Shown in pieces: positions 33,835-64,000 of a stretch of DNA of 64,000 nucleotides. The notes under the pieces were generated by a model that ran no database searches, was not told where the DNA came from, and was given only the letters and a program-made list of their open reading frames with translations. The DNA lies in IMG/VR virus record IMGVR_UViG_3300023174_000039, positions 124,001 through 188,000 of that record; one strand, written 5' to 3'. How positions within the stretch are numbered: position 1 is the first letter of the stretch; the number at the start of each line of letters is the position of its first letter. A program made the position numbers and the translations under genes.

Positions 33835-34434
33835 ATGGATAAAGAACTCTTTAAAGATCATTCAGACTACTGGCAAGTGGCCGACAACATACGCGATATC
33901 TACATGAGCGATGGTAGTATCACCACGCTGTTGGACTTTGAACGTGTGCTAGACGAAGTAGATATCTACGCATTTCGAAATTGGGAAATTGGCGAACTAG
34001 TGGCCGGACCCGAAATCACCAAATATCGTGTGGGCTGTACATTTATGTGGCCGGAAAATCTCATGCCTGATCCCCGTGGCGGCAAAAGATTGCTGCCATT
34101 TGATTGTGAAGTCAGCTACCGCAGAGTGGAAATGAAAATCCCGATCAAGATTACAGATCCTTCAGATTATATCCCCGGCACACACAAGGCCAAGATTGTT
34201 AAAAAGCCTGTGTGGTTGGTGGAAATTGTGATGCCAAAAAGCCTAATGAGTGACATCAAAACAGGCTCAATTGAAATGGAAGATCAGGATATTGATCTGG
34301 AAGAATTGGATGACGCATACGAAAAAGATCTTGACAAGCAAGAGAATCAAAGTGATGCCAAAGCCGAAGACGCACAACAAGACTTGGCTGCTGTGCCCGG
34401 ACAGCCACAAGCACCAGCCCCAGGAGTAGTATAA
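33835..34434 (+). CDS. conserved hypothetical late protein
   Basis: LLDFERVLDE...MPDPRGG; TAAATA at 33825. Confidence 0.75.
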   Translation: MDKELFKDHSDYWQVADNIRDIYMSDGSITTLLDFERVLDEVDIYAFRNWEIGELVAGPEITKYRVGCTFMWPENLMPDPRGGKRLLPFDCEVSYRRVEMKIPIKITDPSDYIPGTHKAKIVKKPVWLVEIVMPKSLMSDIKTGSIEMEDQDIDLEELDDAYEKDLDKQENQSDAKAEDAQQDLAAVPGQPQAPAPGVV

Positions 34435-34973
34435 TGTTTAGACACTTGTTAGAAGGCCTACAGTACAAAGACCTAGAAGGCATCATGAAATCAACTGTGC
34501 ATATTGATGAATTTGCATCAAAAATGGGCGACGATGACGACATTGTGGTAGTGAGCTTTTTTGTAAGAGACCTACAGGCCGCAAAAGATCTAGTGGGTTG
34601 GTTTGAAAAGGGCTATGATTTTGTGCTGGATGCTGATCGCTCACCCGGTGAAATCAAGCCCAGTCGCTATCTAGTGTATGTGGAACTGCGTCGCCGTCCC
34701 GCAGTGGCCAAACAAGTGGGCACATTGATTGATGACCTGGGCACGCTCACAGAATTTGATGCCAAAGACTGGACCATGCGTTACGATGGCCGGACACAGC
34801 CTTGGTCAGTGGATGCAATGAAGGCAACTGTGCCACTTACTCCTGCTGACTATCGGTCAGCACATGGTGATGATCTAAATGATGTACGCACAGCCGCTGG
34901 TATTGAACCCAAGAAAGTTCACAAGCCCACACCAGAGACCTTGGCCATGCAGTCGGCTGCTGGGATAAGATAA
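34434..34973 (+). CDS. hypothetical late protein (putative head-associated)
   Basis: MFRHLLEG start; C-terminal AAGI motifs. Confidence 0.7.
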   Translation: MFRHLLEGLQYKDLEGIMKSTVHIDEFASKMGDDDDIVVVSFFVRDLQAAKDLVGWFEKGYDFVLDADRSPGEIKPSRYLVYVELRRRPAVAKQVGTLIDDLGTLTEFDAKDWTMRYDGRTQPWSVDAMKATVPLTPADYRSAHGDDLNDVRTAAGIEPKKVHKPTPETLAMQSAAGIR

Positions 34974-36166
34974 TGAAGATCACAGACGTTATTAAAGAAG
35001 ATGTTGCTCTTGAAGGTGAAGTTGTTCCACTGGGTAAAAAACATCGTGGTGATCTAGACAGCGTAAATTCATGCTCCAAGTGCGGTGGCAAGTTAGAAGG
35101 CGGAACATACATGGGGCAAAGAATCAAAGTATGCCAACCATGTAAGCAAGTTTATCTACCACCTAACAGCGGTATTGATCAACAGGGTAATAAAATTAAA
35201 GAACAAGGTGTGGCGGAAGGCTCATTGCGTGAACAGGCCAGTAAATTATTGTCTGCTGAAGATAAAGATGGCGTGATCACTATCATAGTACAAGCACCCG
35301 ATGGTACCAAGAGATCAGTAGCCGATACCAATCCAAACTATATCAATAGATGGTTAATGAAATATGGACTACGACTTCCTGCCAGTATTACCAGCAAGTT
35401 TGTGGGTGTGACAGAAGAATTCAGACCCACCACAGGGCAAGCCATGGGCATACGCAGTCAGACTGCACAAAAGATGAATCCTGGCAGCAGTAAATTCATT
35501 TGGAAACGACCAAATCAAATCATGGGCAGTCACACTGAAAATGAACTTCGTGCATTGAAATTTAGGTACTCAGCCAAACACAACGTCTGGGGCGGCACAC
35601 AACAGATGTGGAGTCAACTGGAGGGCACACTAAAAGAATTTGCTCCCAGTGCTCCTGGTGGTGCTGATCGCGGAGGTGGCAACTACTTTAAATCTTTGGC
35701 CCAGGCCTGGTATTATAATGGCGTACACGACTTTGATCTACAAGGTGGTGTCAAGACTCAACAAGACGTGGAACGCTTGCTACAACGTGGTATTGTATGT
35801 CCTGATGGTGTCACACGCAAGTTTGGAATAGATTACAATTCAGGTTTTAACGGTGTCGTGATATCCAGCGATGATTACTATGAACATTCTGATCATGGCA
35901 AACGACCTGGTACAATGATAGATGTTCGCACCGGGCGGCCCTGGGGACCATATGATTATATGGAATTCTCTGAAGATGATTTGGACGAAGATGTAGAAGA
36001 AGGCATCCGTGTGCCAGCACAGCAGATCTTGGGCACAAAAAACCGTGCGCAGTCAGCTTACTATCCCACCAATGTCAAGCCCAAGGTGCCTAAACTAGAC
36101 ACTCCCCTGACAGACAAGGAACTGGCAAGACTCTCACAGTTGGCCGGTGTCAACACAAATAAATAA
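34973..36166 (+). CDS. modular putative internal-head polyprotein (Zn ribbon plus several modules)
   Basis: MKITDVIKE start; CSKC...CQPC; linkers QGVAEG, GVTEE and LKEFAP. Confidence 0.65.
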   Translation: MKITDVIKEDVALEGEVVPLGKKHRGDLDSVNSCSKCGGKLEGGTYMGQRIKVCQPCKQVYLPPNSGIDQQGNKIKEQGVAEGSLREQASKLLSAEDKDGVITIIVQAPDGTKRSVADTNPNYINRWLMKYGLRLPASITSKFVGVTEEFRPTTGQAMGIRSQTAQKMNPGSSKFIWKRPNQIMGSHTENELRALKFRYSAKHNVWGGTQQMWSQLEGTLKEFAPSAPGGADRGGGNYFKSLAQAWYYNGVHDFDLQGGVKTQQDVERLLQRGIVCPDGVTRKFGIDYNSGFNGVVISSDDYYEHSDHGKRPGTMIDVRTGRPWGPYDYMEFSEDDLDEDVEEGIRVPAQQILGTKNRAQSAYYPTNVKPKVPKLDTPLTDKELARLSQLAGVNTNK

Positions 36167-36172
36167 CATATC

Positions 36173-37465
36173 ATGAAAATAAACGACGTTGTTACATTAA
36201 TGGAATTTGGTGCTCCCGGCAGTCGCGCACTGGGCACTGGAAACTTTGCTCTGCTACACCGAGCCTATGTGAACAAACGTCCTAGACTCAGTAGATACTT
36301 GCAGTTGGATTTTGGCAACAATCAAATTATCGAACTTGACGATGATGACATTGAAGCAGTGGCCAACTACTATGATACATTGCCCACAGATCAAGATCGA
36401 TACACCTTTGTGTACGATGTCATGAGTCGTGGGGACAAATTTGATGCATTGTTGAAAAAACTGGGTCGCAGATCTGGTGCTCCTGAGCAACCCAGCTTGC
36501 TGGAGCAAAGCGACGACCCTGATCTAAGTCGCAGTGGTGTGCGTAGTGCGGCATTGAGCACAGCTTTGCGCCAGGCCTACGCCAAGTATCCACAAGCACA
36601 GAGTGATATCGAAGCCTTGATCATGCACGACATGGATGTTCAAAAAGACACCAAACAAGAGCTACAGGCACAAGATAAAATAAATCAACGTCAGGACGAT
36701 ATTGATGTGCAACTGCGCAATGTTGCCGGTAAACAAAGCAAAAAGATTTCCAGCTTAGATCAAGAAAATGATGACTTGACAGCAGAACTAGATCGGCTCA
36801 GCAGAGAACTGGATGCCATGCATGCTCAAACAGGTTCTGAACCTGAGCGCAAGAAACGCAGTGACAGCAAGGGCCAGCCTCCAGTGTACAACGTCAATAT
36901 CAAGTCAGCTGATCGTGCTGAAAAATCACAACAACGAGCAGCCGATGCTGAAAAACGCAAACCAGAACCAGCAAAACTCCGTCCAGGTGCCAGCACATTC
37001 AAACCTGTGGGATCTACTTTGCCCGTGACTCCTGCGGTCAAGCCACCTGCACCCACTATCAACGTGATTGATCGTCCAGATCCCAGTGCTGCCATGAGTC
37101 AAGTGGCATTTCAGGCTCCTGCCCCGCAACCAGACATTGCATTGCCTACCAAGCTGGGAGCAGATCTTGATGAGCCTGAAACGGACGCAACTCAACCAGA
37201 TCTGTTTGCAGAACCCAAAGATAACATAACGGTAGATCAGCCCGTGCCGCAAAGCATGTCCTCAATAGATGCTGAACCTGAACCTGAATTGCCGCCCAAC
37301 GTTACTAACCTGGCCACTCGCCGCAACAGAGTTGCAGAACCAGGCAGTGATCAGTATCGTAGAGACACTGTGGACCGAGCAAGAGATCTCATGCAAAAAC
37401 AAATGGCCATGCACGAAGCACAAGACTTGCGCCGCATGCAAAAACTAGCAGGATTACTGCAATGA
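36173..37465 (+). CDS. putative internal-head/core protein, coiled-coil plus Pro-rich
   Basis: MKINDVVTLME start; ends LRRMQKLAGL. Confidence 0.65.
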   Translation: MKINDVVTLMEFGAPGSRALGTGNFALLHRAYVNKRPRLSRYLQLDFGNNQIIELDDDDIEAVANYYDTLPTDQDRYTFVYDVMSRGDKFDALLKKLGRRSGAPEQPSLLEQSDDPDLSRSGVRSAALSTALRQAYAKYPQAQSDIEALIMHDMDVQKDTKQELQAQDKINQRQDDIDVQLRNVAGKQSKKISSLDQENDDLTAELDRLSRELDAMHAQTGSEPERKKRSDSKGQPPVYNVNIKSADRAEKSQQRAADAEKRKPEPAKLRPGASTFKPVGSTLPVTPAVKPPAPTINVIDRPDPSAAMSQVAFQAPAPQPDIALPTKLGADLDEPETDATQPDLFAEPKDNITVDQPVPQSMSSIDAEPEPELPPNVTNLATRRNRVAEPGSDQYRRDTVDRARDLMQKQMAMHEAQDLRRMQKLAGLLQ

Positions 37466-38670
37466 AAATAAATCAGATTATACACGAAGCAGGTACTGGA
37501 TTAGAAATTGATCGTAGCATTCCTGGCCGCACTATTGCCAGGATCAGTGGAGATCTAGCACACAGAACAGGGTCTCTGACAGATAAAAGATTACCTGATC
37601 ACCATCCTGATGATGATTATGTTCCTTGGTCTGGCAAGGTAGGTGCATCAACCCGTGATGACGAAGAAGACACGTTTGATATAGATTACACCGGCGACGA
37701 TGGTGAATTAAACGAATTTGTTACGCCACAAGCAGTGGCACAAGATCCTGGACTAGAACGTGAAAAGGATGTGGATGTTATTTTCTTTGGCTTTATGCCC
37801 CAAGACTTCACTGCCCGAACTGCATGGAAGGCACTAGAAGATGTGTTGCCTAGAGAATATCCTGCTGGTAGTGAACGAGCACAAAATAAAATAGCAGAAG
37901 TTAGCAAGAATAATGGTGCCGTAGTCACAACCAAGCCCCTGAGCATAGCACAGAAACTGGTTAAAGAATTCCAAGCACGTGGCATCAAGTGTAGAATTGA
38001 TGATTCAGGTCTGGAAGAAGACATAACCCGCAGAGGATTCTTGAAGGGTGCAGGAGCAGCCGCTATGGCAGCAGCCGGCGGATCAGCACTAGGCCAGTCC
38101 ATACAAATGCCCACAGTAGACCAAGTTGACAGACAAAAAATGACAATTGTGGTAGATGGTCAAGAGTATCCCTTAGTCATATTATCTCCTACAGACTTTA
38201 GACCACGTGGCGGACAACAATTGCATATAACCTGTGCGCAGATGGGCGAACGCTGTATGGGTAGATATGATGCTGTGTTAGCACAAAACCGAGTGTTTGT
38301 GTTGCCAGGAACAAAGCCACCGGTTATTCCAGCCGGAGTTGACGAAAGTCGCCGAGGCAGCATGCCTGAGCCTGAAAACTTTGACAGTGACTGGGACTAT
38401 GAAGACGCTATGACACGTTGGAGAAACAGCGACTCTGACCAAGACATTGACTACGAGAATATAATAGACGATGAACCTGATGACTGGTTTGACGAATCTC
38501 GAGAGAAAGTAGGCAATATGGATGCTGATGCATTTGATGCTGCCTTGTCACGTATGAAAAAGCTAGCCGGTGCAGGTCCGCTAAAGACCGTGTATGATCC
38601 CAACAAACGTGTGTACCGAAATGTACCGCATGCTGTGCAACCCGCACAACAACCCAAGAAGGCAAGATAA
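37462..38670 (+). CDS. modular putative internal-head polyprotein with an internal Tat signal
   Basis: MKINQIIHE start; internal LEE-DITRRGFLKGAGAAAMAAAG. Confidence 0.65.
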   Translation: MKINQIIHEAGTGLEIDRSIPGRTIARISGDLAHRTGSLTDKRLPDHHPDDDYVPWSGKVGASTRDDEEDTFDIDYTGDDGELNEFVTPQAVAQDPGLEREKDVDVIFFGFMPQDFTARTAWKALEDVLPREYPAGSERAQNKIAEVSKNNGAVVTTKPLSIAQKLVKEFQARGIKCRIDDSGLEEDITRRGFLKGAGAAAMAAAGGSALGQSIQMPTVDQVDRQKMTIVVDGQEYPLVILSPTDFRPRGGQQLHITCAQMGERCMGRYDAVLAQNRVFVLPGTKPPVIPAGVDESRRGSMPEPENFDSDWDYEDAMTRWRNSDSDQDIDYENIIDDEPDDWFDESREKVGNMDADAFDAALSRMKKLAGAGPLKTVYDPNKRVYRNVPHAVQPAQQPKKAR

Positions 38671-40073
38671 TGAAGATAAAAGATTTTCAAACAGAATCAT
38701 GGAGCGAAAAATACAAGAACAGTATCAACTGCTCGCACCCCAAAGGTTTTAGCCAACGTGCGCATTGTGCCGGCAAAAAGAAGCATAATGAATCTGTTGA
38801 AATGGAAATGGTGTGTGAAGACTGTGGCATGTGCAAGTCACATGGTAGTCTCAATGAAATTCGAAAGGGTCAAAAAGACTCAAATGGCTACACACGTTGC
38901 TGGCCTGGCAAGCATGCCGAAGGTACCAAAAAGGGCAAGAATGGCGGCCAAGTTCGCAACTGTGTGCCCAATGAAAGTGTAGCGGAAGCAGATATGAGTC
39001 GCAGAGGTTTCCTTGGTGCGTTGGCAGGTGCAGGTTTAGCTGCCGCAGGATTAGGTGCCAGTGGTAATGCTCAGGCAGGCACCAACGATGCGGCATTTTT
39101 TAACAAAGTAAACGATCTACATCAAAAAACAGCTCAAACAAATCCTCGTTATGCCAAAGAACATGCATCCTTGAACATAGGTATTGTTAGAGGCATGTCT
39201 GGTGCCTCTGCTGAAAACAACAAGCAATGGGCACAAAAAACTGCTCAACTGTTACAAAAATACGGAGTTGCTGTAAACGAAAGTGTAGTAGAAGGTGAAC
39301 AGCGTGTGGATTCACTTGTGACCGACGCACTGAAAATCATGCAGGGTTCAGAAGTAACTGATGCTGTGCAAGCACTAAAGACTGTGCTGGGAGATAGAGA
39401 GTATAACGGTCGCCGTGGTCATTATAATTTCTATATTAGACAAATAATGGATATGTATAACCAGCAAGGCCTAGCAGAAGACTTCAACGGTGAATACGAT
39501 GACGAAGCAGGCATGGTCAAGAATAACCTTCACACTATTATTCGCGTGTTGACACACCTGGGCAAAGATATCGACAACAACGAAAATTTCCCTGAATGGG
39601 TGCAAGAAAAGATTGCCATGATCAAGCAAACCAGTGTTGAAGTTATGAACTACATGATTAGTCAGCACAAAATGGACGTTGATCCTGAAGTAGAAGAAAT
39701 GTACGAAGCCATGGATCAACTGGCAGAAGAAATGGCAGCCAAAAAAGGCATCAGTGCTGACCTAGTATGGGAAAGCTTCGAAGCTCTAGACGATCACATG
39801 CTGTACGAAACAGCCGCCTGGCGCAGAAAAGAAGGCAAGAGCAAAAAGGGCGGCCTAAACGCCAAAGGTGTTGCTAGCTATAGACGCGAGCATCCTGGTT
39901 CAAAACTGCAAACAGCAGTGACCACAAAGCCTAGTAAATTAAAGCCTGGATCAAAAGCAGCCAAGCGTCGCAAGAGTTTCTGCGCACGTATGTCAGGTGT
40001 TAAAGGACCTGCCAAAAAGCCCAACGGTGAACCCACACGCAAGACTCTGGCCTTGCGCAAATGGAACTGCTGA
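38670..40073 (+). CDS. modular putative internal-head polyprotein with an internal Tat signal and basic Cys modules
   Basis: MKIKDFQTE start; VAE-ADMSRRGFLGALAGAGLAAAG...AQA; C-terminal RRKSFCARM...LRKWNC module. Confidence 0.65.
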   Translation: MKIKDFQTESWSEKYKNSINCSHPKGFSQRAHCAGKKKHNESVEMEMVCEDCGMCKSHGSLNEIRKGQKDSNGYTRCWPGKHAEGTKKGKNGGQVRNCVPNESVAEADMSRRGFLGALAGAGLAAAGLGASGNAQAGTNDAAFFNKVNDLHQKTAQTNPRYAKEHASLNIGIVRGMSGASAENNKQWAQKTAQLLQKYGVAVNESVVEGEQRVDSLVTDALKIMQGSEVTDAVQALKTVLGDREYNGRRGHYNFYIRQIMDMYNQQGLAEDFNGEYDDEAGMVKNNLHTIIRVLTHLGKDIDNNENFPEWVQEKIAMIKQTSVEVMNYMISQHKMDVDPEVEEMYEAMDQLAEEMAAKKGISADLVWESFEALDDHMLYETAAWRRKEGKSKKGGLNAKGVASYRREHPGSKLQTAVTTKPSKLKPGSKAAKRRKSFCARMSGVKGPAKKPNGEPTRKTLALRKWNC

Positions 40074-40723
40074 TGCTGGTTGATGAACTGTTTACCACGT
40101 CGTGGCTGACAGAATCCACGGACTCTGCACCTGATCTTGACCGGATCTTGGTAGACCTGTGTGCCATGGTTGTAAAGGGTAAGCAACGCAAGCCCGACTA
40201 CTACGGCATGGTTGCGGCTGCTGTGGTTGATCCCAAAGGCCGTGTGGTCCGGGCTGTGAATCACTTTGATGACGCAACTGACAAACGCATACATGGTGAA
40301 CGTGCTGCCATTCAAGCGTATGAACGCCGGTACGGTCGAGTCACACCAGATTGTACTATAGTAACCACCCTGAGTCCTTGCAGTGAGCGCATGGACGATC
40401 GTTATGGTGAGAGCTGTGAAGATCTTTTAGATGACTATGGTATCACTGATATCTACTGTGGCTATCAAGACCCCACACAAGACTCGGGCTACACAGTTAC
40501 TAGCAATGAAAAAATACAGGAACTGTGCAAGGCCTTTGCTGACACGTTCCTGGGTGATCAACAACTGGATGAACTCAGCTTCTTGGGTAGCCCTTGCACC
40601 AAAGACTGTTCTGGGCATCGCGCAGGATATGATTGGTCAGCACGTAAAGGCAACATCCCGGGCACGAGCCCTTACAGTCCCAGCTTCAACAACGGCGCCA
40701 ATTTAAGAGCCGCTGGCAAATAA
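40073..40723 (+). CDS. Zn-dependent nucleotide deaminase-like protein plus a small C-terminal module
   Basis: HGERAAI...TTLSPC...C deaminase motif; start MLVDELF coupled by TGATG. Confidence 0.75.
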   Translation: MLVDELFTTSWLTESTDSAPDLDRILVDLCAMVVKGKQRKPDYYGMVAAAVVDPKGRVVRAVNHFDDATDKRIHGERAAIQAYERRYGRVTPDCTIVTTLSPCSERMDDRYGESCEDLLDDYGITDIYCGYQDPTQDSGYTVTSNEKIQELCKAFADTFLGDQQLDELSFLGSPCTKDCSGHRAGYDWSARKGNIPGTSPYSPSFNNGANLRAAGK

Positions 40724-41452: not shown

Positions 41453-41576
41453 TAAAAAATTTCCGTGTTAGGTAAATAAAAGTACAATACCACTAAAAAT
41501 TTTGTGGCTCTTGTGTTTTTCTAATACATATTTAACTTATGTATCACATACGTCAAAAATTTTCAAAAGGATCAAA

Positions 41577-44988: not shown

Positions 44989-45612
44989 ATGTCACAGATT
45001 GTATGGATGTTTAGCCTACTGCCTGACAGCATTTTTGTCATGTTGACCTATGCGATATTTGCACTAGGCGTACTGTTGTACATTGCAAGCAAGCTGGTCA
45101 AGTGGATTCCCATGATGATGCAATACCGCATGCCTGCTGAACTGGTGGGTGTGGTGTGCCTGTGTATTGGCGCTTATTTCTTTGGTTGGCGCGGTAACGA
45201 AGAGAAATGGCTGGCTAGAATTAAAGAGCTAGAACAAAAAGTTCAAATTGCTGAAGCCCGGAGTCGTGAAGTCAACACCGTAATTGAAACCAAAGTTGTT
45301 ACCAAGATCAAAGTTGTAAAGGAAACAGTATATGCAAACCGAGAAATCATTCGAGAAGTTGCTGGCGCTCAGCTTGACAGTCAGTGTACTTTGCCTAAGT
45401 CTAGCGTCGTGCTCCACGACAGTGCCAGTCGTAATGAAGTGGCCCGAGGTCCCGGCAGTGTTGATGGAACCCCCTCAGGCATTGAAGCCCATAGACTCCT
45501 CGAAACCGTTGTCGACAACTACGGAAGCTGTAACGAAAACATCGAAAAACTAAAAGCCTGGCAGGAATGGTATCGAACACAAAAACAAATATTTGAAAGT
45601 GTTGCCAAATGA
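44989..45612 (+). CDS. inner-membrane spanin (Rz-like)
   Basis: N-terminal TM segments, coiled coil, CTLP...NYGSC...LKAWQEW; lies in the lysis cassette. Confidence 0.75.
   Translation: MSQIVWMFSLLPDSIFVMLTYAIFALGVLLYIASKLVKWIPMMMQYRMPAELVGVVCLCIGAYFFGWRGNEEKWLARIKELEQKVQIAEARSREVNTVIETKVVTKIKVVKETVYANREIIREVAGAQLDSQCTLPKSSVVLHDSASRNEVARGPGSVDGTPSGIEAHRLLETVVDNYGSCNENIEKLKAWQEWYRTQKQIFESVAK
45332..45553 (+). CDS. embedded outer-membrane spanin lipoprotein (Rz1-like)
   Basis: +1 frame inside the Rz-like gene; AAGGA RBS; lipobox LASC; Pro-rich mature part. Confidence 0.75.
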   Translation: MQTEKSFEKLLALSLTVSVLCLSLASCSTTVPVVMKWPEVPAVLMEPPQALKPIDSSKPLSTTTEAVTKTSKN

Positions 45613-46187
45613 GAGCCAGGGAATTCACTACAGAAGCACATCACTATCGCATGGCCACACAAAAAATGGGTAACTGGAAAGTGCACCTAGATAGTCATGC
45701 TGTGGTAACCATGGCAGATCGTGACATTGACAGTGGCAGTGTGATCAACATACTGGGATTTGCCTGTAGAAACGTTCCTGAACTCGGAACAATACCGCTG
45801 GGCAAAGGAGCGTATTTTCAAGACACAAACACCTTGATATCTTTATATCTCAAACGATCAGATCATTACCCCGATGAAATTACCCTGGAGACTGTGTTAT
45901 CGCCAGACATGCGACCTACTCCGCCACTGTTCCGCAGACCAGTCCCGCCTGCTCCGCGCGACATGCAAGATAACGCATTAGTGAGGGCAAATAAACAGGC
46001 CATGAAACAAAAAACTCAAGCTCGTGGTCGTGATGCTGTGAGTCAAGATATTGAAAGCATGATGCCAACCTTAAAGGCCTCAATGAATCAGCCACCAGCA
46101 CCAGACGCACCTTTGAACCGAGAACAGCGTAGGGCCTGGAGTAAATACCTACAAAAAAACAAATACTTAAAAGGAGTCATTGAATGA
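45609..46187 (+). CDS. hypothetical protein with a capsid-targeting-like N-terminus
   Basis: MRAREFTTE start. Confidence 0.65.
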   Translation: MRAREFTTEAHHYRMATQKMGNWKVHLDSHAVVTMADRDIDSGSVINILGFACRNVPELGTIPLGKGAYFQDTNTLISLYLKRSDHYPDEITLETVLSPDMRPTPPLFRRPVPPAPRDMQDNALVRANKQAMKQKTQARGRDAVSQDIESMMPTLKASMNQPPAPDAPLNREQRRAWSKYLQKNKYLKGVIE

Positions 46188-46801: not shown

Positions 46802-46802
46802 A

Positions 46803-47339: not shown

Positions 47340-47354
47340 TATCAAGGAGTTGAC

Positions 47355-55694: not shown

Positions 55695-58600
55695 ATGAAC
55701 ATCAACGAACTAGATTCCTATAACCTTGCCGATGCTGTTAAGTTTAATGAAGAACTTAACCCACGCATCTGGCAAGGTTCTCGCATGCGCCCAGAAGTGC
55801 GCCGAAAATTACTGGCCATTGCTCGAGATTTTAAACAAAGTCTAGGACTCAGTGACCTAGAAGTCAAAGACATCACACTCAGCGGAAGCAACGCTGGTTA
55901 CACATATACCCCGCACTCGGATATTGACCTACACCTTGTGGTAGATGTTCCACAAGCAGAAACTGACGAAGTGTATCGTGAGTTGTTCAATGCCAAAAAG
56001 TACCAATATAATGATGAGCACAACTTGGCCATTGGCGGCTATCCTGTTGAGTTGTATGTTCAGCCGGCCAATCAAACACATCACTCACAAGGAATCTATT
56101 CAGTATTAAACAACGACTGGACTGCTATTCCTCGCAAGCGAGAAAGCACAGTGAATGACGGTGCTGTAAAAAGCAAGTACGAACTCATGAAGCATCGTAT
56201 TAACTCTGCCATCAACAGCGGCAACATCAAACAGTTGACCAAAACTGCCGCACGTATCAAACAAATGCGGCAAGCAGGTCTAGACAAAAACGGTGAACTG
56301 GGTCCTGAGAATCTGGCCTACAAAATGTTGCGTACACAAGGGCTGATTGAAAAGTTGTACACTGCTCGCACCGCGGCCAAAGATCGGCTGCTGAGTCTAC
56401 AAGAGCAACCTGTGGCAGAACACGTAACGTACGGTTTTGCAGAAGATGCAACCATATCTCCTTACGGTGTTAGTCCCACGACACAGATGTTTCTAAATGA
56501 AACAGGTGACAGTGAACAAACTGTACATGATTTTATTTCTCATACCGCTGAACAACTGGGCATTGAAAACATGCCGCATATTGAATTGCACACAGACCCT
56601 GAATGGTCAGAACGTGAACACAGCTTTGGTCGTTACACTCCTGAAACACATACCTTGGAAGTGAACTTGGCCAATCGTCACATCATGGACATCCTGCGTA
56701 CCACAGCACACGAACTGGTACATTGCAGACAACATGAACTATCTCCACTGCCCAACGAAGCAGGAGAAACTGGCAGTCGTTGGGAAAACGAAGCACATGC
56801 CAAAGCTGGGGTGATCATGCGTGACTATGCTGATGCCAATCCTGAAAAGTTTGGCGAACATGCCCTGGCAGAAGCATCAGGATATATTCCCACTAGGGCG
56901 CAGGTTCGAGATCCACGTTTCAGTACTGCACTTACTGTGGATGTGCATCCAGGGCAAACAGGCAAGGAAGCCAACAAGATGGCTTTGCAAACAGATGCAC
57001 AAGGTCGTCCTGCCTTGTTGACGAAGGGGCTGGCAAATCAACTGCACGAAGAGTTTGCACAGTTTGATGAGTCAACTGCGCTATTTGAAATCAAAATGAC
57101 CGGCAAGAACCTGCGAGCCGAAGCTGCCAAAACAGGTGCCATTGCCGGCATGGAATTTGAAATGATTGTGCCCAACATGGAGGGCGACCCTGACGATGAT
57201 CAGGAAATGGAGCCTGATTGGGAATATGATGAAAGTGTTATTAGTATTGATGATGCATGTAACTTCTTTGAAAACGGTGAGGGCAACACCAGTGGTGACA
57301 TTAGACGCCTGCGTGAACGCATGCAAAACTATTATTACGATTGGTTAGATGAGCAGTTTGACAGTCGCTGGGACGGCGATGAGTTAGAGTTTATTTACAA
57401 CTACATTAAAGAAAATGCCAGCGCAGAAGAAATTGCAGAAATATTGGGCACAGAACCCAACGAAGATGGTGAGTATCCTGACCCAGGTAAACAAGATTAT
57501 CTTGATGCCGCAAACAAAATTAGCGAACAAGGCTACGACAACCAATGGTATAGTCAAGCACGTGAAGACGCACAAGAAGATTATAACAGAAATGCTGACC
57601 AAGAACGAGAATGGCTAGCAGACCAAGACATCAACACCATGAAGGATGTGATGGACACGTTTGGCAATGTCAATTGGCCTTACTACTATAATTCCAATGT
57701 CGGTGGTGATAGAAGTATAGATGATGTGGCTAATGATTTCCAAGACGCAATAGGCCGTGATGTTCAAGCTAGCACTAGATATCACTCAGGGAGTGTGGAT
57801 AGACCCAGCCCAAGTTCACATCATTATGTGGTCGAGCCCGACGGCAGTTTAGATGGCGACAACTACGGGGACCGAGGCCTGGAGTTTGTGAGCCCACCAT
57901 TGCCCATTGATGTAATCCTTAATGATCTAAGCAAAGTCAAACGCTGGGCAGACAGCTATGGTTGCTACACTAACGATTCAACTGGATTGCACATCAATAT
58001 TTCAGTGCCTGAATACAACAGAGACAAGCTGGACTTTGTAAAGTTGGCTATCCTGATGGGCGACGAACATGTGTCCGACAGCTTTGGACGATTAGGTGCA
58101 TACTACGCAAAAAGTGCTATGGCTGCAATTCGCGACAATGTTCGCAGTCGCCCTGAGGCCGTGACAGATGCCCTGGAAAAAATGCGAACACACATGAATA
58201 CAGCGGCATCAAAAGCTATTCATGCCGGTGTGACTCAGAAATTTACCAGTATCAACGTCAAAGACGGCCACATTGAATTTCGCTCACCTGGCGGTGATTG
58301 GTTGGGCGAGAACTTTGACAAGATTGAAAACACCCTGTTGCGTTTCACAGTGGCCATGAGTGCTGCCTTAAACCCAGAAATGTATCGCGAAGAATACCTG
58401 AAGAAACTGTACAAGTTATTGACTCCGGAAGGACAGAAAGACGAGTACGGAGACATGATCGAAGAGTTCTCCAAGTACATGGTATCACTGCAAGGCAGTG
58501 GTGCAGAAGCGAGTGGCAAGTTGAGCAAAGAAACACAGCAGGCCATCAAGGACTTTAGAACAGCGGCCAGCAAAGAACTAAAACAAAAAAATCTGGCCAA

Positions 58601-60572
58601 CAAGCTGAAAAAGGGCAACACTGCTGGTCAAAAGTACTGGTGGAAAGTTTCTAATCCTGGAAACAGTAATGCTGGTATAGAAGTTGTGGCCACAACCAAA
58701 GAGGAAGCAATTGAAAAAGCCACGGGTGAAGATGGGTATCCAAGCTGGGCTAACTATCTAAGTTCCCTGGTTGCAAAGCCGTTGAGTCCTTATTATGAAA
58801 AATCCAAACCTTCCCAACAAACTGCCAGATATGAAATCTACAACAAACAAACTGGTAACTCGGTAGAGACTGCTGATGGCATTACCAACGATGCAGACGC
58901 ACTAGTTCGCCTGAATGATTATATTGAACACGGTCCGCATGCACTACAACGCGGGCAAGCCTCACGTATGTTTGGTATTCGCACCACCAATGGGGTTGAG
59001 ATTGTGGACATAGACATACCCATGGCCCAAGGTCGTGCTGCCACAAGTCCAACCGGAAAATGGAAAATAACAGACGGATTGGGTCGTTACCTATATGTGT
59101 TCCGTCCTGCAGAGAACACCCGATCAGCAGCCAACGAGTTAGCCGCATTATGGGCAAGAGAAAACAACTTTGATGGCAACTATCAAGTTGAGCCAGTAGA
59201 AGATACTGCGCAAACTGGCACACAGGATCAACAACAAGGCGGCTTGATTGACGTTGTGCCAGGATCTACAAATGATCTAGCACGTCAGCGAGCAACACCT
59301 GGTGCATTTACAGGTGCATGGAAGGTTCTAGATGCCGACGGCAACGAGCTGTATAGATTCTCAGGCGTAGGCAACAATCAAAGTGATGCTAACCGTGTAG
59401 CAGTACAATGGATGCAGAACAATGGTTATGATCACGGCACAGAAATGTCTGTAGTGCCTGTCATGAGCGAAAGCATTGCGGAAGGTGCAGATAAAAAATA
59501 CACAATTAAAAAATCTTACACCATGTCCAAGGCTGGTGTAGAAAAATCTGTATGGCACATTATGGACGGTGACTTTGTGGTGGACGTTACTGACTTGAGA
59601 CGCGATGCCAAGTACTACGCTGACAAGTGGAATGCTGCCGAGAAGGAATCATCAGACGCATCTCAAAATCTACACAAGCAAGGCATGGCAGAAGGTCTGA
59701 ATGAATTTGCACCTAGCAGCCAAGGTGGAGGTAATTCAGGACGCTGGTACACTGATGACGAGCTTGCAGATATCATTGGTGATGATTGGTTTGAAGACTT
59801 TGATGTCAGCCACGATGGGTTTAATATTGATACACATGGCGAAAAAGCCAAGCAAAATCTAGTGGGTTATGCCAACTCCTGGTTCGATGATCGAGGTTAT
59901 AATGTCAACGTAATGGGCGTGGAACACAATGATGTTGACCACGATTTAAAATGGTACATTGTTGGTAGTTTCCACAATCCCCGCTTTGCCAACGAAGGTG
60001 TGACGGAAGCCAGTTTATCAACCATGCGAGACTTTTTTGCCGGTGATGAAAAGGCACGTGATCCATACGAAATTACCAAACAACGGTTACACTTTAGTAA
60101 AGATCCCAAAACTGCTGCAACCAATAGAAAAGAATTTAGAAGCAAAGAAGAGTATGAACAATGGGCAAAACAAAATAAAATAGTAAATGCACCTAAGGTT
60201 AACGAGGCTCCAGAATTTTTCTCTATGCCATTGCGCATGAGCGAATATCGTGGTAAACATCATCCTGCAACCGAAGAGCCGTACGATGCCAAGTTCAAGT
60301 TCTCGGGTGATTTAAAAGATCGTGTACACAGTCTATTAGATGCAGGAACCAAGCCCAAGCTGTTACAAGTCAATCCGCGTCATTTGTTGGCCACACAAGA
60401 CTGGCTGAGCAATCAAGGCGGCGGCAAGCCACCATTTGCCACAATGAAACAACATCCTGTGGTGCTACAAAAAAACAACAAGTTGTACATTCTCGACGGC
60501 CATCATAGATCAGCAGATGCGCTCAACTCTGGCTCACCAATTGAAGTATACCTATTCCAGGATGAATTATGA
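55695..60572 (+). CDS. 1625-aa polyvalent protein: Pol-beta nucleotidyltransferase, HExxH metallopeptidase, putative amidoligase, repeats and ParB-like domain
   Basis: GSNAGY...SDIDLH; AHELVH; GMEFE...EPDGSL...LEFVSPP...STGLHINIS...IEFRSPGG; ILDGHHR. Confidence 0.8.
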   Translation: MNINELDSYNLADAVKFNEELNPRIWQGSRMRPEVRRKLLAIARDFKQSLGLSDLEVKDITLSGSNAGYTYTPHSDIDLHLVVDVPQAETDEVYRELFNAKKYQYNDEHNLAIGGYPVELYVQPANQTHHSQGIYSVLNNDWTAIPRKRESTVNDGAVKSKYELMKHRINSAINSGNIKQLTKTAARIKQMRQAGLDKNGELGPENLAYKMLRTQGLIEKLYTARTAAKDRLLSLQEQPVAEHVTYGFAEDATISPYGVSPTTQMFLNETGDSEQTVHDFISHTAEQLGIENMPHIELHTDPEWSEREHSFGRYTPETHTLEVNLANRHIMDILRTTAHELVHCRQHELSPLPNEAGETGSRWENEAHAKAGVIMRDYADANPEKFGEHALAEASGYIPTRAQVRDPRFSTALTVDVHPGQTGKEANKMALQTDAQGRPALLTKGLANQLHEEFAQFDESTALFEIKMTGKNLRAEAAKTGAIAGMEFEMIVPNMEGDPDDDQEMEPDWEYDESVISIDDACNFFENGEGNTSGDIRRLRERMQNYYYDWLDEQFDSRWDGDELEFIYNYIKENASAEEIAEILGTEPNEDGEYPDPGKQDYLDAANKISEQGYDNQWYSQAREDAQEDYNRNADQEREWLADQDINTMKDVMDTFGNVNWPYYYNSNVGGDRSIDDVANDFQDAIGRDVQASTRYHSGSVDRPSPSSHHYVVEPDGSLDGDNYGDRGLEFVSPPLPIDVILNDLSKVKRWADSYGCYTNDSTGLHINISVPEYNRDKLDFVKLAILMGDEHVSDSFGRLGAYYAKSAMAAIRDNVRSRPEAVTDALEKMRTHMNTAASKAIHAGVTQKFTSINVKDGHIEFRSPGGDWLGENFDKIENTLLRFTVAMSAALNPEMYREEYLKKLYKLLTPEGQKDEYGDMIEEFSKYMVSLQGSGAEASGKLSKETQQAIKDFRTAASKELKQKNLANKLKKGNTAGQKYWWKVSNPGNSNAGIEVVATTKEEAIEKATGEDGYPSWANYLSSLVAKPLSPYYEKSKPSQQTARYEIYNKQTGNSVETADGITNDADALVRLNDYIEHGPHALQRGQASRMFGIRTTNGVEIVDIDIPMAQGRAATSPTGKWKITDGLGRYLYVFRPAENTRSAANELAALWARENNFDGNYQVEPVEDTAQTGTQDQQQGGLIDVVPGSTNDLARQRATPGAFTGAWKVLDADGNELYRFSGVGNNQSDANRVAVQWMQNNGYDHGTEMSVVPVMSESIAEGADKKYTIKKSYTMSKAGVEKSVWHIMDGDFVVDVTDLRRDAKYYADKWNAAEKESSDASQNLHKQGMAEGLNEFAPSSQGGGNSGRWYTDDELADIIGDDWFEDFDVSHDGFNIDTHGEKAKQNLVGYANSWFDDRGYNVNVMGVEHNDVDHDLKWYIVGSFHNPRFANEGVTEASLSTMRDFFAGDEKARDPYEITKQRLHFSKDPKTAATNRKEFRSKEEYEQWAKQNKIVNAPKVNEAPEFFSMPLRMSEYRGKHHPATEEPYDAKFKFSGDLKDRVHSLLDAGTKPKLLQVNPRHLLATQDWLSNQGGGKPPFATMKQHPVVLQKNNKLYILDGHHRSADALNSGSPIEVYLFQDEL

Positions 60573-61576
60573 GAGCACATGAATTTTTATCCGAAGGTCA
60601 AGAAGAATTTAACCAAGAAATAATGCAACACGGTTTTGAGTTCAGTCAGAAAATTGCCGGTGTTACATATAAAGTAATAAACGATCTTGGTGTACTCTTG
60701 GTCACAGCCTTAGATCCAGCAGGAGAACAAATCGGACATGCAAGTTTTTGGAAACATCAAACTCGTTCAGGACTAGAAAGTCTAAGTACCGAAGTTGACG
60801 ACAAATGGCAAGGCAAAGGCATTGCCGCAAACATGTATGCCGTTGTACGTATGCTGGGCGCAAACATAAATCCATCATTATTCCAAAGCAAGCAAGGAAA
60901 AAACATGTGGAAGAAGTGGCAACAACAAGGCGACGTTGCACATCTAAAACGCATGAATGCAAAAAACAAAGACCAAGATATAGCAGAAACAATAAACTCC
61001 GCCATACTCAATAAGAGATTCCGACACAAACAAGTAATTGGCAATTATACTTACAGAGCATCAGTTGAAATGTTTATGGGTGAGCCGTTATTGTCAATCA
61101 AAGCCTATGACGGAGATAGGGAAATAGGTCATATTCTGTTTGAAATAATTGTAAGATCTCCAGGAGGGAAGAGAGATCCATCCGCGGATTACTTAGAAAG
61201 CGGCGGCACTGAGGTTGATCCAGCATATAGAAACAAAGGTGTGGCATCCACAATGTATGCGTATGCCAAAATGTTAGGCAATGATATTCGACCCAGTTAT
61301 AATCAAACAAGTCAAGGCCAAGCAATGTGGGCGGCCTGGAACAAGACAGGTGATGCAAAGCATTTGATCGGTACTGCCGCGGAATCCACTATGGCGGAAA
61401 ACTTTGCTGATGGCAAAGTAAAAGGCAAAAGCCGCCCTGGGCGTGTGAAACGGTCAGGTGCCAGTTGTGATGGCAGTGTGACAGATCTACGTGCTCGTGC
61501 AAAGAATGCATCAGGTGAAAAGGCCAAAATGTATCACTGGTGTGCCAACATGAAGTCTGGTCGCAAAAAAAGTTAA
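60569..61576 (+). CDS. tandem GNAT acetyltransferase domains plus a basic C-terminal module
   Basis: EVDDKWQGKGIA and EVDPAYRNKGVA acetyl-CoA motifs; MRAHEFLSE start. Confidence 0.8.
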   Translation: MRAHEFLSEGQEEFNQEIMQHGFEFSQKIAGVTYKVINDLGVLLVTALDPAGEQIGHASFWKHQTRSGLESLSTEVDDKWQGKGIAANMYAVVRMLGANINPSLFQSKQGKNMWKKWQQQGDVAHLKRMNAKNKDQDIAETINSAILNKRFRHKQVIGNYTYRASVEMFMGEPLLSIKAYDGDREIGHILFEIIVRSPGGKRDPSADYLESGGTEVDPAYRNKGVASTMYAYAKMLGNDIRPSYNQTSQGQAMWAAWNKTGDAKHLIGTAAESTMAENFADGKVKGKSRPGRVKRSGASCDGSVTDLRARAKNASGEKAKMYHWCANMKSGRKKS

Positions 61577-62277: not shown

Positions 62278-62281
62278 TGTT

Positions 62282-62321: not shown

Positions 62322-62325
62322 CAGG

Positions 62326-62616
62326 ATGGGATTACAAAGCGTTCAATTTGAATACGAAGTACATTGCGACTGGACCGGCACACCACCTGTTTATCGCTTG
62401 TACATCAATGACGAACTGTTTACTGAACGCACATACATCTGGAATAACAAATATCTTGAAGAAGCAGTGTCAATCGAAGCACTGCCTGGGGACTATGTTG
62501 TTCGTTATGAATTACACGGTAACGGAACGCTGACTGCAAAAAACCCCAAAGTCACCATTGGCACAGCAGAGTTTATAGACAATAACACATTAAGGATTCC
62601 GCATGAGAGCTCATGA
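62326..62616 (+). CDS. hypothetical late protein
   Basis: PVYRLYINDELFTERTYIW. Confidence 0.7.
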   Translation: MGLQSVQFEYEVHCDWTGTPPVYRLYINDELFTERTYIWNNKYLEEAVSIEALPGDYVVRYELHGNGTLTAKNPKVTIGTAEFIDNNTLRIPHESS

Positions 62617-62821
62617 GATTATGGAAAATGCCAGTGCAGGCGCCACTTGTGCAGGGTCAATTGCTCCTGTAGAAAGCACCATGGGCATGGTATCAAGAAA
62701 CGGCGGATCAATGCTAACAGGTAAATATGTAACAGGTTCAGATCCCACACCGAACACACCTAAAGAATACAAAAGGAACAAGAATGTTAGCGGACGCTTT
62801 AAAAATTCTCCTGGCAACTGA
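62603..62821 (+). CDS. small protein with a capsid-targeting-like N-terminus
   Basis: MRAHEIMENASAGAT. Confidence 0.65.
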   Translation: MRAHEIMENASAGATCAGSIAPVESTMGMVSRNGGSMLTGKYVTGSDPTPNTPKEYKRNKNVSGRFKNSPGN

Positions 62822-63224
62822 AGAAGCTTTTGCTCTAAAAGCCAAACAGTTTCACTGGAACGTAGAAGGCCCAGATTTTGGCCAGCTACATGCTTTCTTT
62901 GACGCGATCCACGACGATGTGTATGGTGCTACTGACCCTACCGCTGAATACATTCGTGCCATGGGCGATTATGCTCCAGGGTCATTTGAACGATTTATAG
63001 AACTAACAAAAATACAGGGACAAACAAAGATCCCACGTGCTAGACTTATGTTAGAAGAACTCTTGGCCAACAATGGTCAAATGCTGGATCTTCTTAACGA
63101 AACCTTCCAAGTAGCAACCAATGAAAATCAGCAAGGTATTGCCAACTTCATTGCCGAACGAATTGATGCCCACCAGAAACATGGATGGATGTTGAGAAGT
63201 TATTTGAAAGAGCAACGAGCATGA
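62784..63224 (+). CDS. dps: Dps/ferritin-like DNA protection protein
   Basis: FHWNVEGPDFGQLH...AEYIR...HQKHGWML. Confidence 0.92.
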   Translation: MLADALKILLATEEAFALKAKQFHWNVEGPDFGQLHAFFDAIHDDVYGATDPTAEYIRAMGDYAPGSFERFIELTKIQGQTKIPRARLMLEELLANNGQMLDLLNETFQVATNENQQGIANFIAERIDAHQKHGWMLRSYLKEQRA

Positions 63225-63913
63225 GTTCATCAGCAGACATTAGATCAATTCTAGATCGCTTGGCCACAGTAGAAGAAAGCAAACTTACTCCTGTCAACGT
63301 CAAGCATGGGTTAAACAAACAGCAGAAGTCTGCGGACCAATTGCCTGCGCTGTTCAAACCCCGAGACATTAGTCCCACATTGGCCAAAAAGCCTTATCAA
63401 AAACATCCCATGGACGGCAAACTAGTTGGCGACTCAATTGAGCCTACCAAGAGTCCGCTAGAAGAAGCCATGCAAGACATTGAAGAAGACATGCTCAGCA
63501 AAGTCAAGCGCAGTTTTGTTGATTACTTGGAGCAATTAGAAGACGATAACAAAATTGACGGCCACTTGGTCCGCAAGGCCAAGGCTGAACTAGATATTGC
63601 CAATGACCCAGATCCTGAAAACGAATCAGAGATAGATGAAGATCCTACACAACAAGACCTTGATGTGGTGCCTGCACAAGCACCTGCTGAAGATCCTACA
63701 TTGGCAGAAGCACCTGTAAAAACCTATCCCATGGAAGATGGTAGCATGCTAGAGTGTTATGGTAATGAATCACAAGGATTTGAAATTCGTCATGGAGAAC
63801 GACGATTACCCACACGTTTCCGCAATGTCAATGATGCCGACATGGCAGTAAAGATATTCCAGAAACGTAAAAACAAGCCCCAGGGCAACGAAGATTATTT
63901 GGAAGAACGCTGA
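63221..63913 (+). CDS. hypothetical late protein (putative head-associated)
   Basis: DIRSILDRLATVEE near the N-terminus; ends EDYLEER. Confidence 0.7.
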   Translation: MSSSADIRSILDRLATVEESKLTPVNVKHGLNKQQKSADQLPALFKPRDISPTLAKKPYQKHPMDGKLVGDSIEPTKSPLEEAMQDIEEDMLSKVKRSFVDYLEQLEDDNKIDGHLVRKAKAELDIANDPDPENESEIDEDPTQQDLDVVPAQAPAEDPTLAEAPVKTYPMEDGSMLECYGNESQGFEIRHGERRLPTRFRNVNDADMAVKIFQKRKNKPQGNEDYLEER

Positions 63914-63914
63914 A

Positions 63915-64000
63915 ATGATAGTAGATCAATTATTCACAACCCCTGCTGTAGTTGGTAACACCAAGCAGTTTTTTGGTGAAAGCCGTCACAACAAGTTGCT
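63915..64000 (+). CDS. 3'-truncated protein beginning MIVDQLFTT
   Basis: Open to the window end; N-terminus resembles MLVDELFTT at 40073. Confidence 0.55.
   Translation, partial: MIVDQLFTTPAVVGNTKQFFGESRHNKL

What the first reader, a model, noticed from the sequence alone, without database searches (positions are those of the whole stretch)
34434..64000. Candidate head-packaged cargo polyprotein system: shared capsid-targeting-like N-termini and Glu-ending protease linkers
Seen: about a dozen late genes begin with a related short leader, usually reaching a Glu. Examples are MKITDVIKE (34973), MKINDVVTLME (36173), MKINQIIHE (37462), MKIKDFQTE (38670), MLVDELFTTSWLTE (40073), MRAREFTTE (45609), MNINE (55695), MRAHEFLSE (60569), MRAHEIME (62603) and MIVDQLFTT (63915). 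Inside these proteins, unrelated modules are separated by a recurring hydrophobic-x-E linker: QGVAE/G, ESVAE/A, QGLAE/D, QGMAE/G, ESIAE/G, EGVTE/A, QDIAE/T, TMAE/N, L(N/K)E/FAP. Established: T4 internal proteins carry a 10-residue capsid-targeting sequence (IPIII MKTYQEFIAE) that prohead protease gp21 removes by cutting after Glu. Inference: these ORFs are polyproteins packaged in the prohead, cut into many small effectors, and injected with the DNA. The payloads would include a nucleotidyltransferase, metallopeptidase, amidoligase, GNATs, an HxGH transferase and a deaminase.
Basis: partly seen in the sequence, partly recalled or inferred. Interest (0 to 1): 0.88.

Follow-up and report, generated by a model that had tools for sequence, protein, structure and literature searches.

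The report
Head-targeting leaders on modular phage proteins
In this fragment of an uncultured giant phage, seven genes start with the short tag that phage T4 uses to load proteins into its head, and their building blocks are joined by the motif that the T4-type head protease cuts, which points to a large, shuffled set of proteins carried inside the capsid, although no cutting or packaging has been shown.

Summary
Seven window genes start with M-[RK]-x-x-[EDQ]-hydrophobic-…-E. In the window plus relatives, 47 of 1498 genes start this way, against 6 of 6997 internal Met. Selection is on the protein: codons vary and there is no conserved upstream DNA.

The leaders match N-terminal propeptides read from the T4 record (IPII/IPIII, gp24, gp22). 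They also match PA5oct gp333, a small portal-adjacent protein detected in virions by mass spectrometry.

Conserved modules (NFADGK…, KWSxKYK…, FAPxGG…, a Tat-signal-like segment) sit either directly after a leader or internally after hydrophobic-x-Glu. P1 is Glu in 92 of 92 NFADGK contexts and P3 is hydrophobic in 83 of 92. G-hydrophobic-A-E is about 7-fold enriched in leader-bearing proteins of other contigs.

Every cultured relative encodes a gp21-type prohead protease. The window phage's own protease gene was not retrieved.

Best reading: T4-style capsid-targeting propeptides plus gp21-type cleavage sites on cassette-built cargo proteins. Cleavage, packaging and injection remain inferred. 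MNINE, the MLVD/MIVD starts, "late genes" and the metallopeptidase call are not supported. I class it as a new variant of a known kind.

The parts
33805..34973 (+). Two virion structural protein genes (33805-34434 and 34434-34973). Their stop and start codons overlap with each other and with the first leader-bearing gene.
   Evidence: PHROG 12928 and 13138, 'virion structural protein'. 38% identity to PA5oct gp189, which was detected by ESI-MS/MS.
34973..36166 (+). Leader-bearing protein, 397 aa. Leader MKITDVIKE at 34973-34999. Linker QGVAE at 35204-35218. Junction TLKE|FAP at 35627-35638.
   Evidence: The FAPxGG module follows either a leader or a linker in other contigs.
36173..37465 (+). 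Leader-bearing protein, 430 aa. Leader MKINDVVTLME at 36173-36205, followed directly by an FGAP-type module.
37462..38670 (+). Leader-bearing protein, 402 aa. Leader MKINQIIHE at 37462-37488. Junction SGLEE at 38005-38019, then a Tat-signal-like segment at 38020-38094. Conserved C-terminal module of about 100 aa.
   Evidence: Pfam TAT_signal 22.2 bits against a cut-off of 22.7. Database relatives nearly all start MKI[NKR][HQ]II.E and share the C-terminal module around variable middles.
38670..40073 (+). Leader-bearing protein, 467 aa. Leader MKIKDFQTE at 38670-38696, then the KWSxKYK..SINC module. Linker NESVAE at 38970-38987, then a Tat-like segment at 38988-39077. Linker QQGLAE at 39462-39479. 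DUF6321 module at 39813-40070.
40073..40723 (+). dCMP-deaminase-like protein with the atypical start MLVDELFTTSWLTE (40073-40114). Junction QQLDE at 40559-40573 precedes a CTKDCSGH..AGY.W module.
   Evidence: Pfam dCMP_cyt_deam_1, E = 1e-11. In L296 the same module sits directly after a leader, next to the major capsid gene.
45609..46187 (+). Leader-bearing protein, 192 aa. Leader MRAREFTTE at 45609-45635.
   Evidence: No family hit.
52939..54738 (+). Leaderless multi-module protein. HxGH nucleotidyltransferase-like N-terminus, junction GAELNE|FAS at 53515-53532, C-terminal DYIEE at 54709-54723.
   Evidence: Pfam CTP_transf_like, E = 4.9e-4, just below the cut-off. Alignments to relatives end at residues 193-198.
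55695..60572 (+). Polyvalent protein, 1625 aa: nucleotidyltransferase (residues 1-235), HExxH segment, amidoligase (675-868), small modules, ParB-like C-terminus. Junctions: QPVAE 56406-56420, HALAE 56859-56873, ESIAE 59469-59483, QGMAE+GLNE|FAP 59679-59705, EGVTE 59994-60008, KVNE 60195-60206.
   Evidence: Pfam Amidoligase_2 E = 1.6e-6 and NTP_transf_2 E = 5e-4. ParBc_2 E = 5e-4. Stand-alone nucleotidyltransferase hits end at residues 235-238, just before QPVAE. Alignment ends cluster at 1257-1258.
60569..61576 (+). Leader MRAHEFLSE (60569-60595), GNAT, QDIAE (60974-60988), GNAT, STMAE (61385-61399), then the NFADGK module (61400-61573).
   Evidence: Pfam GNAT hits in both halves. Relative L080 has a leader directly followed by the second GNAT. 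The module is 83-98% identical in more than 600 viral contigs.
62603..62821 (+). Small leader-bearing protein, 72 aa. Leader MRAHEIME at 62603-62626.
   Evidence: Homologues in 19 loci all align from residue 1.

Best explanation
The window comes from an uncultured giant myophage related to Pseudomonas phage PA5oct and the Rak2-like phages. I propose that the 8-11-residue N-terminal leader is a T4-type capsid-targeting propeptide. It would bind the assembling prohead core and be removed by the phage's gp21-family prohead protease, which cuts after Glu in hydrophobic-x-Glu. The internal G-hydrophobic-A-E and L-N/K-E linkers would be further sites for the same protease. Cassette-built precursors would then be cut inside the prohead into separate modules: enzymes, small basic Cys-containing modules, and Tat-signal-bearing modules. 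These modules would stay in the head and enter the next cell with the DNA.

Shown: the motifs, their enrichment, their position at module boundaries, their match to T4 propeptides, and a virion-detected PA5oct protein with the same leader.

Inferred: targeting, cleavage, retention in the head, and injection.
For: (1) Leader enrichment is about 36-fold at true N-termini. Selection acts on the protein, with aliphatic P3 in 122 of 134 leaders.
(2) N-termini read from the T4 record: IPII/IPIII MKTYQEFIAE|A, gp24 MAKINELLRE|S, gp22 MLKEQLIAE|A, gp23 ..FLTE|A. Window leaders MRAHEFLSE|G and MKINQIIHE|A match them. The gp21 motif is L/I-x-E; CTS residues 4 and 7 do the targeting and residues 8 and 10 the processing (PMC9026906).
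(3) PA5oct gp333 lies between the portal and gp21-like protease genes, is flagged ESI-MS/MS, and starts MKINDIITE|G. Its homologues carry either leader type.
(4) The NFADGK, KWSxKYK, FAPxGG, AANPAQQ, Tat-like and CTKDCSGH modules occur after a leader or after hydrophobic-x-E in unrelated contexts. P1 is E in 92 of 92 and P3 is hydrophobic in 83 of 92, against a background of 0.19.
(5) Out-of-window enrichment of [GS][VLIM]AE: 53 against 7.2+-2.2, with clean D and K controls.
(6) A gp21-type protease is present in every cultured phage that shares the window's structural protein. It is also in the 328-kb contig L296, where a leader+module gene follows the capsid gene.
(7) The capsid protein of that clade has a conserved L-x-E|[AS]ATAG at about residue 41.
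(8) The Tat-like segment always begins 2-4 residues after the Glu. It would be N-terminal only after cleavage.
(9) The leader genes overlap stop/start with virion-protein genes.
Against: - There is no proteomic or biochemical evidence for any window protein.
- The gp21-type protease of the window's own contig was not retrieved; three scans were capped at the best 80 hits.
- Hydrophobic-x-E is short and common, so individual sites cannot be called.
- Some multi-module proteins have no leader: 52939, and probably the 1625-aa protein.
- The Glu could simply be the first residue of each module.
- The DUF6321 module is a free-standing gene in T7-like pelagiphages, where no prohead protease gene is annotated in the head-gene region examined.
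- Modules of 60-100 aa might escape from the prohead, as T4 core peptides do.
- The interval that holds the leader genes also contains non-cargo genes and varies from 57 bp to more than 10 kb among relatives.
Confidence: 0.6

Rival explanations
1. Only the N-terminal leader is a targeting or cleavage signal. The internal hydrophobic-x-E linkers are not cut. They are flexible spacers or scars of cassette fusion (a leader+module gene fused in frame behind another gene), and the multi-domain proteins are packaged whole.
For: Leader+module genes and the same modules in internal positions coexist, as gene fusion would produce. The N4 virion RNA polymerase and ArdC are transferred unprocessed (PMC5512222). 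Leaderless multi-module proteins exist.
Against: The linkers have their own consensus, [QE][GS]-hydrophobic-A-E, with P2 mostly Ala. Leaders end in hydrophobic-T/S/x-E, so the linkers are not simply left-over leaders. The consensus is 7-fold enriched, and the D and K variants are not. An internal Tat-like signal placed 2-4 residues after the Glu makes sense only if it is exposed.
Confidence: 0.22
2. The precursors are cut in the cytoplasm by a different protease and are not capsid cargo. Candidates are the HExxH segment of the polyvalent protein, the phage ClpP/ClpA-like system, or a host enzyme. The leader would serve another purpose, and the Tat-bearing modules would be exported in the producing cell.
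For: Iyer et al. predict autoprocessing of polyvalent proteins by a zincin-like peptidase. The lineage carries ClpA-like and DnaJ genes next to the locus, and ClpP in relatives. The window phage's prohead protease was not seen.
Against: The leader equals T4 propeptides and the N-terminus of a virion-detected head protein. A leader+module gene sits in the head-gene cluster of L296. The HExxH segment has no family match. ClpP has no such sequence specificity (established knowledge).
Confidence: 0.1
3. The motifs reflect composition, chance, or DNA-level elements (translation-initiation or recombination sequences) and have no function in the protein.
For: Hydrophobic-x-E is frequent in any Glu-rich protein. 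The region is hypervariable.
Against: Synonymous codon variation with conserved residues, and no conserved upstream DNA. Shuffle controls and D/K controls. A 36-fold excess at N-termini over internal Met.
Confidence: 0.03

Closest known systems
Phage T4 internal proteins IPI/IPII/IPIII and Alt, with the capsid-targeting sequence and the gp21 prohead protease
   Same: A short N-terminal leader ending in hydrophobic-x-Glu. The leader is shared by otherwise unrelated proteins. The core E-F-[IV]-x-E is almost identical. Like the T4 internal proteins, which share only the conserved CTS (PMC3012670), the proteins behind the leader are very diverse and sit in a variable locus. Enzymes are among the cargo, as with Alt.
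   Different: The leader is one residue shorter. The host phage is a PA5oct/Rak2-related giant phage, not a Tevenvirinae member. Many precursors are multi-module with internal sites, whereas T4 IPs are single proteins with a single cut. Nothing has been tested experimentally.
T4 core proteins gp22, gp67 and gp68, and the inner-body/ejection proteins of phiKZ, 201phi2-1 and SPN3US
   Same: A gp21-family protease makes several cuts after Glu in one precursor. N-terminal propeptides are conserved among diverged paralogues. The mature SPN3US gp47 has an N-terminal transmembrane segment (PMC5694885), which parallels the Tat-like segments here.
   Different: In those phages the cut pieces are mostly discarded propeptide or scaffold, and the motif is S/A/G-x-E. 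Here the pieces are conserved, mobile modules, and the motif is hydrophobic-x-E as in T4.
Polyvalent proteins (Iyer, Burroughs, Anand, de Souza, Aravind 2017, PMC5512222)
   Same: The 1625-aa ORF joins nucleotidyltransferase, HExxH, amidoligase and ParB-like parts in one chain, in a phage. That paper predicts packaging and delivery with the DNA.
   Different: The paper proposes processing by a built-in metallopeptidase. It does not describe a shared N-terminal leader or Glu-ending junctions: a term search of the full text found no 'linker' and no 'amidoligase'.

Membership tests
T4-type capsid-targeting propeptide / gp21 substrate | N-terminal propeptide of about 10-20 residues ending in L/I-x-Glu | tested here: met
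   Seven window genes. P3 is I/L/V in 122 of 134 leaders. Compared directly with the T4 record.
T4-type capsid-targeting propeptide / gp21 substrate | The same phage encodes a gp21-family (T4-type) prohead protease | tested here: inconclusive
   Not in the window. The parent contig was not among the best 80 hits of three scans. The protease is present in all cultured relatives and in L296 next to a leader gene.
T4-type capsid-targeting propeptide / gp21 substrate | The protein is found in the virion | not testable with these tools
   Indirect evidence only: PA5oct gp333, which has the same leader, is flagged ESI-MS/MS in its record.
T4-type capsid-targeting propeptide / gp21 substrate | Cleavage after the Glu is demonstrated | not testable with these tools
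   Needs N-terminomics or an in vitro assay.
Polyvalent proteins (Iyer et al. 2017) | Several unrelated conflict-type domains in one polypeptide of a phage or conjugative element | tested here: met
   NTP_transf_2, Amidoligase_2 and ParBc_2 in the 1625-aa ORF. Two GNAT domains in the 60569 protein.
Polyvalent proteins (Iyer et al. 2017) | Zincin-like metallopeptidase domain | tested here: inconclusive
   An HExxH string is present in residues 243-393, but Pfam gives no hit at E <= 0.1.
Twin-arginine (Tat) signal peptide | S/T-R-R-x-F-L-K motif followed by a hydrophobic stretch | tested here: inconclusive
   The motif is read directly in two window proteins. Pfam TAT_signal scores 22.2 bits, just under its 22.7 cut-off. 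PF10518 is precomputed on relative P0126.
Twin-arginine (Tat) signal peptide | Located at the N-terminus of the protein | tested here: not met
   It is internal in the precursor (residues 187 and 107). It always lies 2-4 residues after a leader or linker Glu and would be N-terminal only after cleavage.

The most novel reading that the evidence does not exclude
The leader may be a general, sequence-readable tag for capsid cargo across a large clade of uncultured freshwater and marine giant phages. Prohead proteolysis would then do more than trim. It would release interchangeable modules from cassette-built polyproteins and expose Tat signal peptides, so that some injected modules are re-exported by the new host's Tat system into its periplasm. 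That would be a two-step delivery route not described for any phage.
Probability: 0.2. Interest if true: 0.9.

Novelty: new variant of a known kind. Interest (0 to 1): 0.72.

Why it matters
If the leader marks capsid cargo, the injected-protein repertoire of many uncultured giant phages could be listed from sequence alone. That repertoire probably includes anti-defence and host-takeover factors. In these data it includes nucleotidyltransferases, acetyltransferases, an amidoligase, a deaminase, J-domain proteins, ParB-like nucleases, and very highly conserved small modules of unknown function.

It would also give polyvalent proteins a concrete processing mechanism. It would extend the T4 expression-packaging-processing principle to another phage lineage. 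The Tat-like modules raise the testable idea that a phage delivers proteins to the periplasm of the cell it has just infected.

Tried and rejected
- PA5oct gp212, annotated 'head maturation protease', was my first protease query. Its homologue in L096 reads as ClpP, so those hits say nothing about a prohead protease. The true gp21-like gene of PA5oct is at record positions 84091-84705.
- Three attempts to find the parent contig's gp21-type protease failed because only the best 80 hits are returned. tblastn of the ClpP-like PA5oct gp212 found nothing in the window; the window was not searched with a true gp21-type sequence.
- The T4 late-promoter string TATAAATA occurs once in the window against 1.7 expected, which gives no information on timing.
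- tblastn of the NFADGK module against GenBank phages found no match, and it has no PHROG.
- The AlphaFold model of the NFADGK module is three short helices (pLDDT 72) and has no PDB match.
- Pfam on pieces of the polyvalent protein gave only a weak ParB-like hit.
- The label 'T4-GC0119 structural protein' on a cyanophage DUF6321 protein is not backed by Sullivan et al. 2010, which calls it hypothetical.
- The virion-detected cyanophage cytidylyltransferase T4-GC190 is only a loose precedent. The window's HxGH domain finds no marine cyanophage homologue.
- I rejected the idea that the leader is a DNA-level element.
- I rejected the idea that the module-bearing contigs are unrelated phage types. 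57 of 77 share other window genes, and the neighbourhoods are syntenic.
Full report
What the window is. It lies at positions 124001-188000 of a 331,654-bp viral contig, IMGVR_UViG_3300023174_000039. The protein of 33805-34434 is 38% identical to the virion protein gp189 of Pseudomonas giant phage PA5oct. It has weaker relatives in Atu_ph07, Phosso, a Vibrio giant phage, XaC1 and the Rak2-like phages. The local order is the same as in PA5oct: PhoH on the minus strand, two structural genes, then DnaJ-like, ClpA-like and another structural gene. In the window, however, 13 kb lie between the second structural gene and the DnaJ gene. In 40 relatives where both ends are visible, this interval runs from 57 bp to 9 kb, and in 35 more it exceeds the 10 kb fetched. 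It is a hypervariable locus.

The leaders. Genes at 34973, 36173, 37462, 38670, 45609, 60569 and 62603 start M-[RK]-x-x-[EDQ]-hydrophobic-…-E. The first four follow the two structural genes with overlapping stop and start codons. In the window plus 76 related loci, 47 of 1498 genes start this way against 6 of 6997 internal Met. In the relatives these genes sit just after the two structural genes. Among 134 unique leaders, Arg, Ala, Glu, Phe and Ile each use several codons. Position 7, which the search pattern left free, is I/L/V in 122. Upstream there is only an RBS-like purine run. Selection is therefore on the peptide, with consensus M-[RK]-[AI]-x-[ED]-[FI]-[ILV]-x-E.

Starts that do not fit. 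MNINE (55695) is the conserved start of a nucleotidyltransferase module that is a free-standing gene in Maribacter phages and cyanophages. MLVDELFTT and MIVDQLFTT are a different type of start. The 63915 ORF is 772 aa and lies just upstream of the family-B DNA polymerase gene.

Comparison with T4. The following were read from the T4 record, not from memory. IPII and IPIII start MKTYQEFIAE|A. IPI starts MKTFKEFTS…. gp24 starts MAKINELLRE|S. gp22 starts MLKEQLIAE|A. gp23 is cut at ..FLTE|A. The window's MRAHEFLSE|G and MRAREFTTE|A match the IP leader. MKINQIIHE|A and MKITDVIKE|D match the gp24 propeptide. A review states that gp21 cuts after L/I-x-E, that the first 10 residues of IPIII suffice for head incorporation, and that residues 4 and 7 serve targeting while residues 8 and 10 serve processing (PMC9026906).

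A cultured relative. The PA5oct head cluster reads portal, gp333, acidic gp332, gp21-like protease gp331, scaffold, capsid. gp333 is 73 aa, is marked as detected by ESI-MS/MS, and starts MKINDIITE|G. Its homologues in environmental contigs start MRLLEFTDE or MLLREFVYF. Both leader types therefore head one portal-adjacent head protein. The capsid proteins carry a conserved L-x-E|[AS/N] at about residue 41, which fits a T4-like specificity.

The protease. PA5oct gp212, annotated 'head maturation protease', is ClpP-like and misled my first scan. The true gp21 family is present in PA5oct, Atu_ph07, Phosso, the Vibrio phage, XaC1 and the Rak2-like phages. That is every cultured phage that shares the window's structural protein. 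It is also abundant in contigs from the same kinds of samples. I did not retrieve the parent contig's own copy. In L296, a 328-kb contig, a 67-aa gene follows the capsid gene. It consists of a leader plus the CTKDCSGH module, the same module that ends the window's deaminase-like protein.

The junctions. The last 58 residues of the 60569 protein (NFADGK…HWCANMK…) are 83-98% identical in more than 600 viral contigs. In 74 distinct ORFs the module follows Glu. Some 66-aa genes are simply leader plus module. In the large protein database the residue before the module is Glu in 92 of 92 distinct contexts. P3 is V/I/L/M/F/Y in 83 of 92, against a background of 0.19. No protein starts with Met directly followed by the module. 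The same holds for KWSxKYK..SINC (24 of 24), FAPxGG and AANPAQQ. Relative L080 has a leader directly followed by the second GNAT, which in the window follows QDIAE. Free-standing nucleotidyltransferase hits end at residues 235-238, just before QPVAE-242. Alignment end-points lie within 4 residues of a hydrophobic-x-E in 37 of 88 cases against 15.8+-3.6. Outside the window, in 214 leader-bearing proteins with the leader removed, [GS][VLIM]AE occurs 53 times against 7.2+-2.2. The D and K variants are not enriched.

Tat-like segments. Two window proteins carry ..E|DITRRGFLKGAG… and ..E|ADMSRRGFLGALAG…AQA. Pfam TAT_signal scores 22.2 bits, just below its cut-off. In relatives the segment always starts 2-4 residues after a linker Glu, or directly after a leader as in MKINHIVDE|DITRRGFL. 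It would be N-terminal only after cleavage.

The 37462-protein family. In the large database this family nearly always starts MKI[NKR][HQ]II.E. It keeps a C-terminal module of about 100 residues and swaps its middle parts (J-domain, Tat module, DUF6321), which are joined by G[VLM]AE or GLEE.

How widespread it is. 57 of 77 module-bearing loci share other window genes, and the neighbourhoods are syntenic: polyvalent gene, small leader gene, ferritin-like gene, DNA polymerase. This is one broad lineage, not all phages. No cultured phage carries the NFADGK module.

Interpretation. The most economical reading is a T4-style system of targeting and processing applied to cassette-built cargo. I put about 0.6 on this overall. 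I have more confidence in the leader than in cutting at the internal sites, and least in injection. The main rival is that only the leader is functional. Other possibilities are a different protease or no protein-level function.

Payloads. The deaminase, GNAT and amidoligase calls are sound. The nucleotidyltransferase, HxGH and ParB-like calls are borderline by Pfam. The metallopeptidase call is unsupported.

Noticed in passing
window 38020-38094 and 38988-39077; proteins P0129, P0140, P0216: Twin-arginine-signal-like segments (RRGFL plus an Ala/Gly-rich stretch) lie inside proteins. They always start 2-4 residues after a leader or linker Glu and are never at a plain Met start.
   Followed up: partly
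L001:3735-4406 (PA5oct gp212); L096:17316-17918: The PA5oct gene annotated 'head maturation protease' (gp212) is ClpP-like. The lineage also carries ClpA-like (window 49009-51273) and DnaJ-like (48162-48938) genes. This suggests a phage-encoded Clp system separate from the gp21-type prohead protease.
   Followed up: partly
window 61400-61573: The NFADGK…HWCANMK module (58 aa) is 83-98% identical across hundreds of contigs whose other genes have diverged. The model shows three short helices. The invariant first 11 residues are predicted disordered, and there is no PDB or PHROG match.
   Followed up: partly
window 39936-40069; L159:5884-6129: The DUF6321 module is 72-76% identical at the DNA level to genes of T7-like Pelagibacter phages. 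There it is a free-standing 81-aa basic protein encoded between the scaffold and capsid genes. It also ends large basic multi-module proteins encoded between the terminase genes of cyanomyophages.
   Followed up: partly
window 54709-54723 and 63893-63907; L102, L140: The motif D-Y-[IL]-E-E recurs 1-4 residues from the C-terminus of two window proteins, and as a junction before KWSxKYK modules elsewhere. These may be linker stumps left by module loss, or C-terminal processing sites.
   Followed up: no
window 36137-36163, 37439-37462, 38575-38600: A [RK]-x-x-[KQ]-L-A-G motif lies near the C-termini of three consecutive leader-bearing proteins. Across all 11 candidate proteins [KQ]LAG occurs 5 times against 0.2 expected, and it does not occur in the other window proteins.
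   Followed up: no
window 46184-48112: A likely lysis cassette lies inside the variable locus: a GH19-like lysozyme, a DUF4337 membrane protein, a holin-like protein and a 72-aa signal-peptide protein.
   Followed up: no
window 9700-10901, 14508-14828, 31397-32140, 41502-42554, 62784-63224: Host-like metabolic genes: NAD synthetase, ferredoxin-like, HesB/IscA-like, PhoH, a TctC-family binding protein and a ferritin/Dps-like protein.
   Followed up: no
window 38787-38801, 38970-38987, 39276-39293: The 38670 protein repeats N-E-S-V-(A/V)-E three times, as HNESVE|M, PNESVAE|A and VNESVVE|G. This looks like a reused linker cassette.
   Followed up: no
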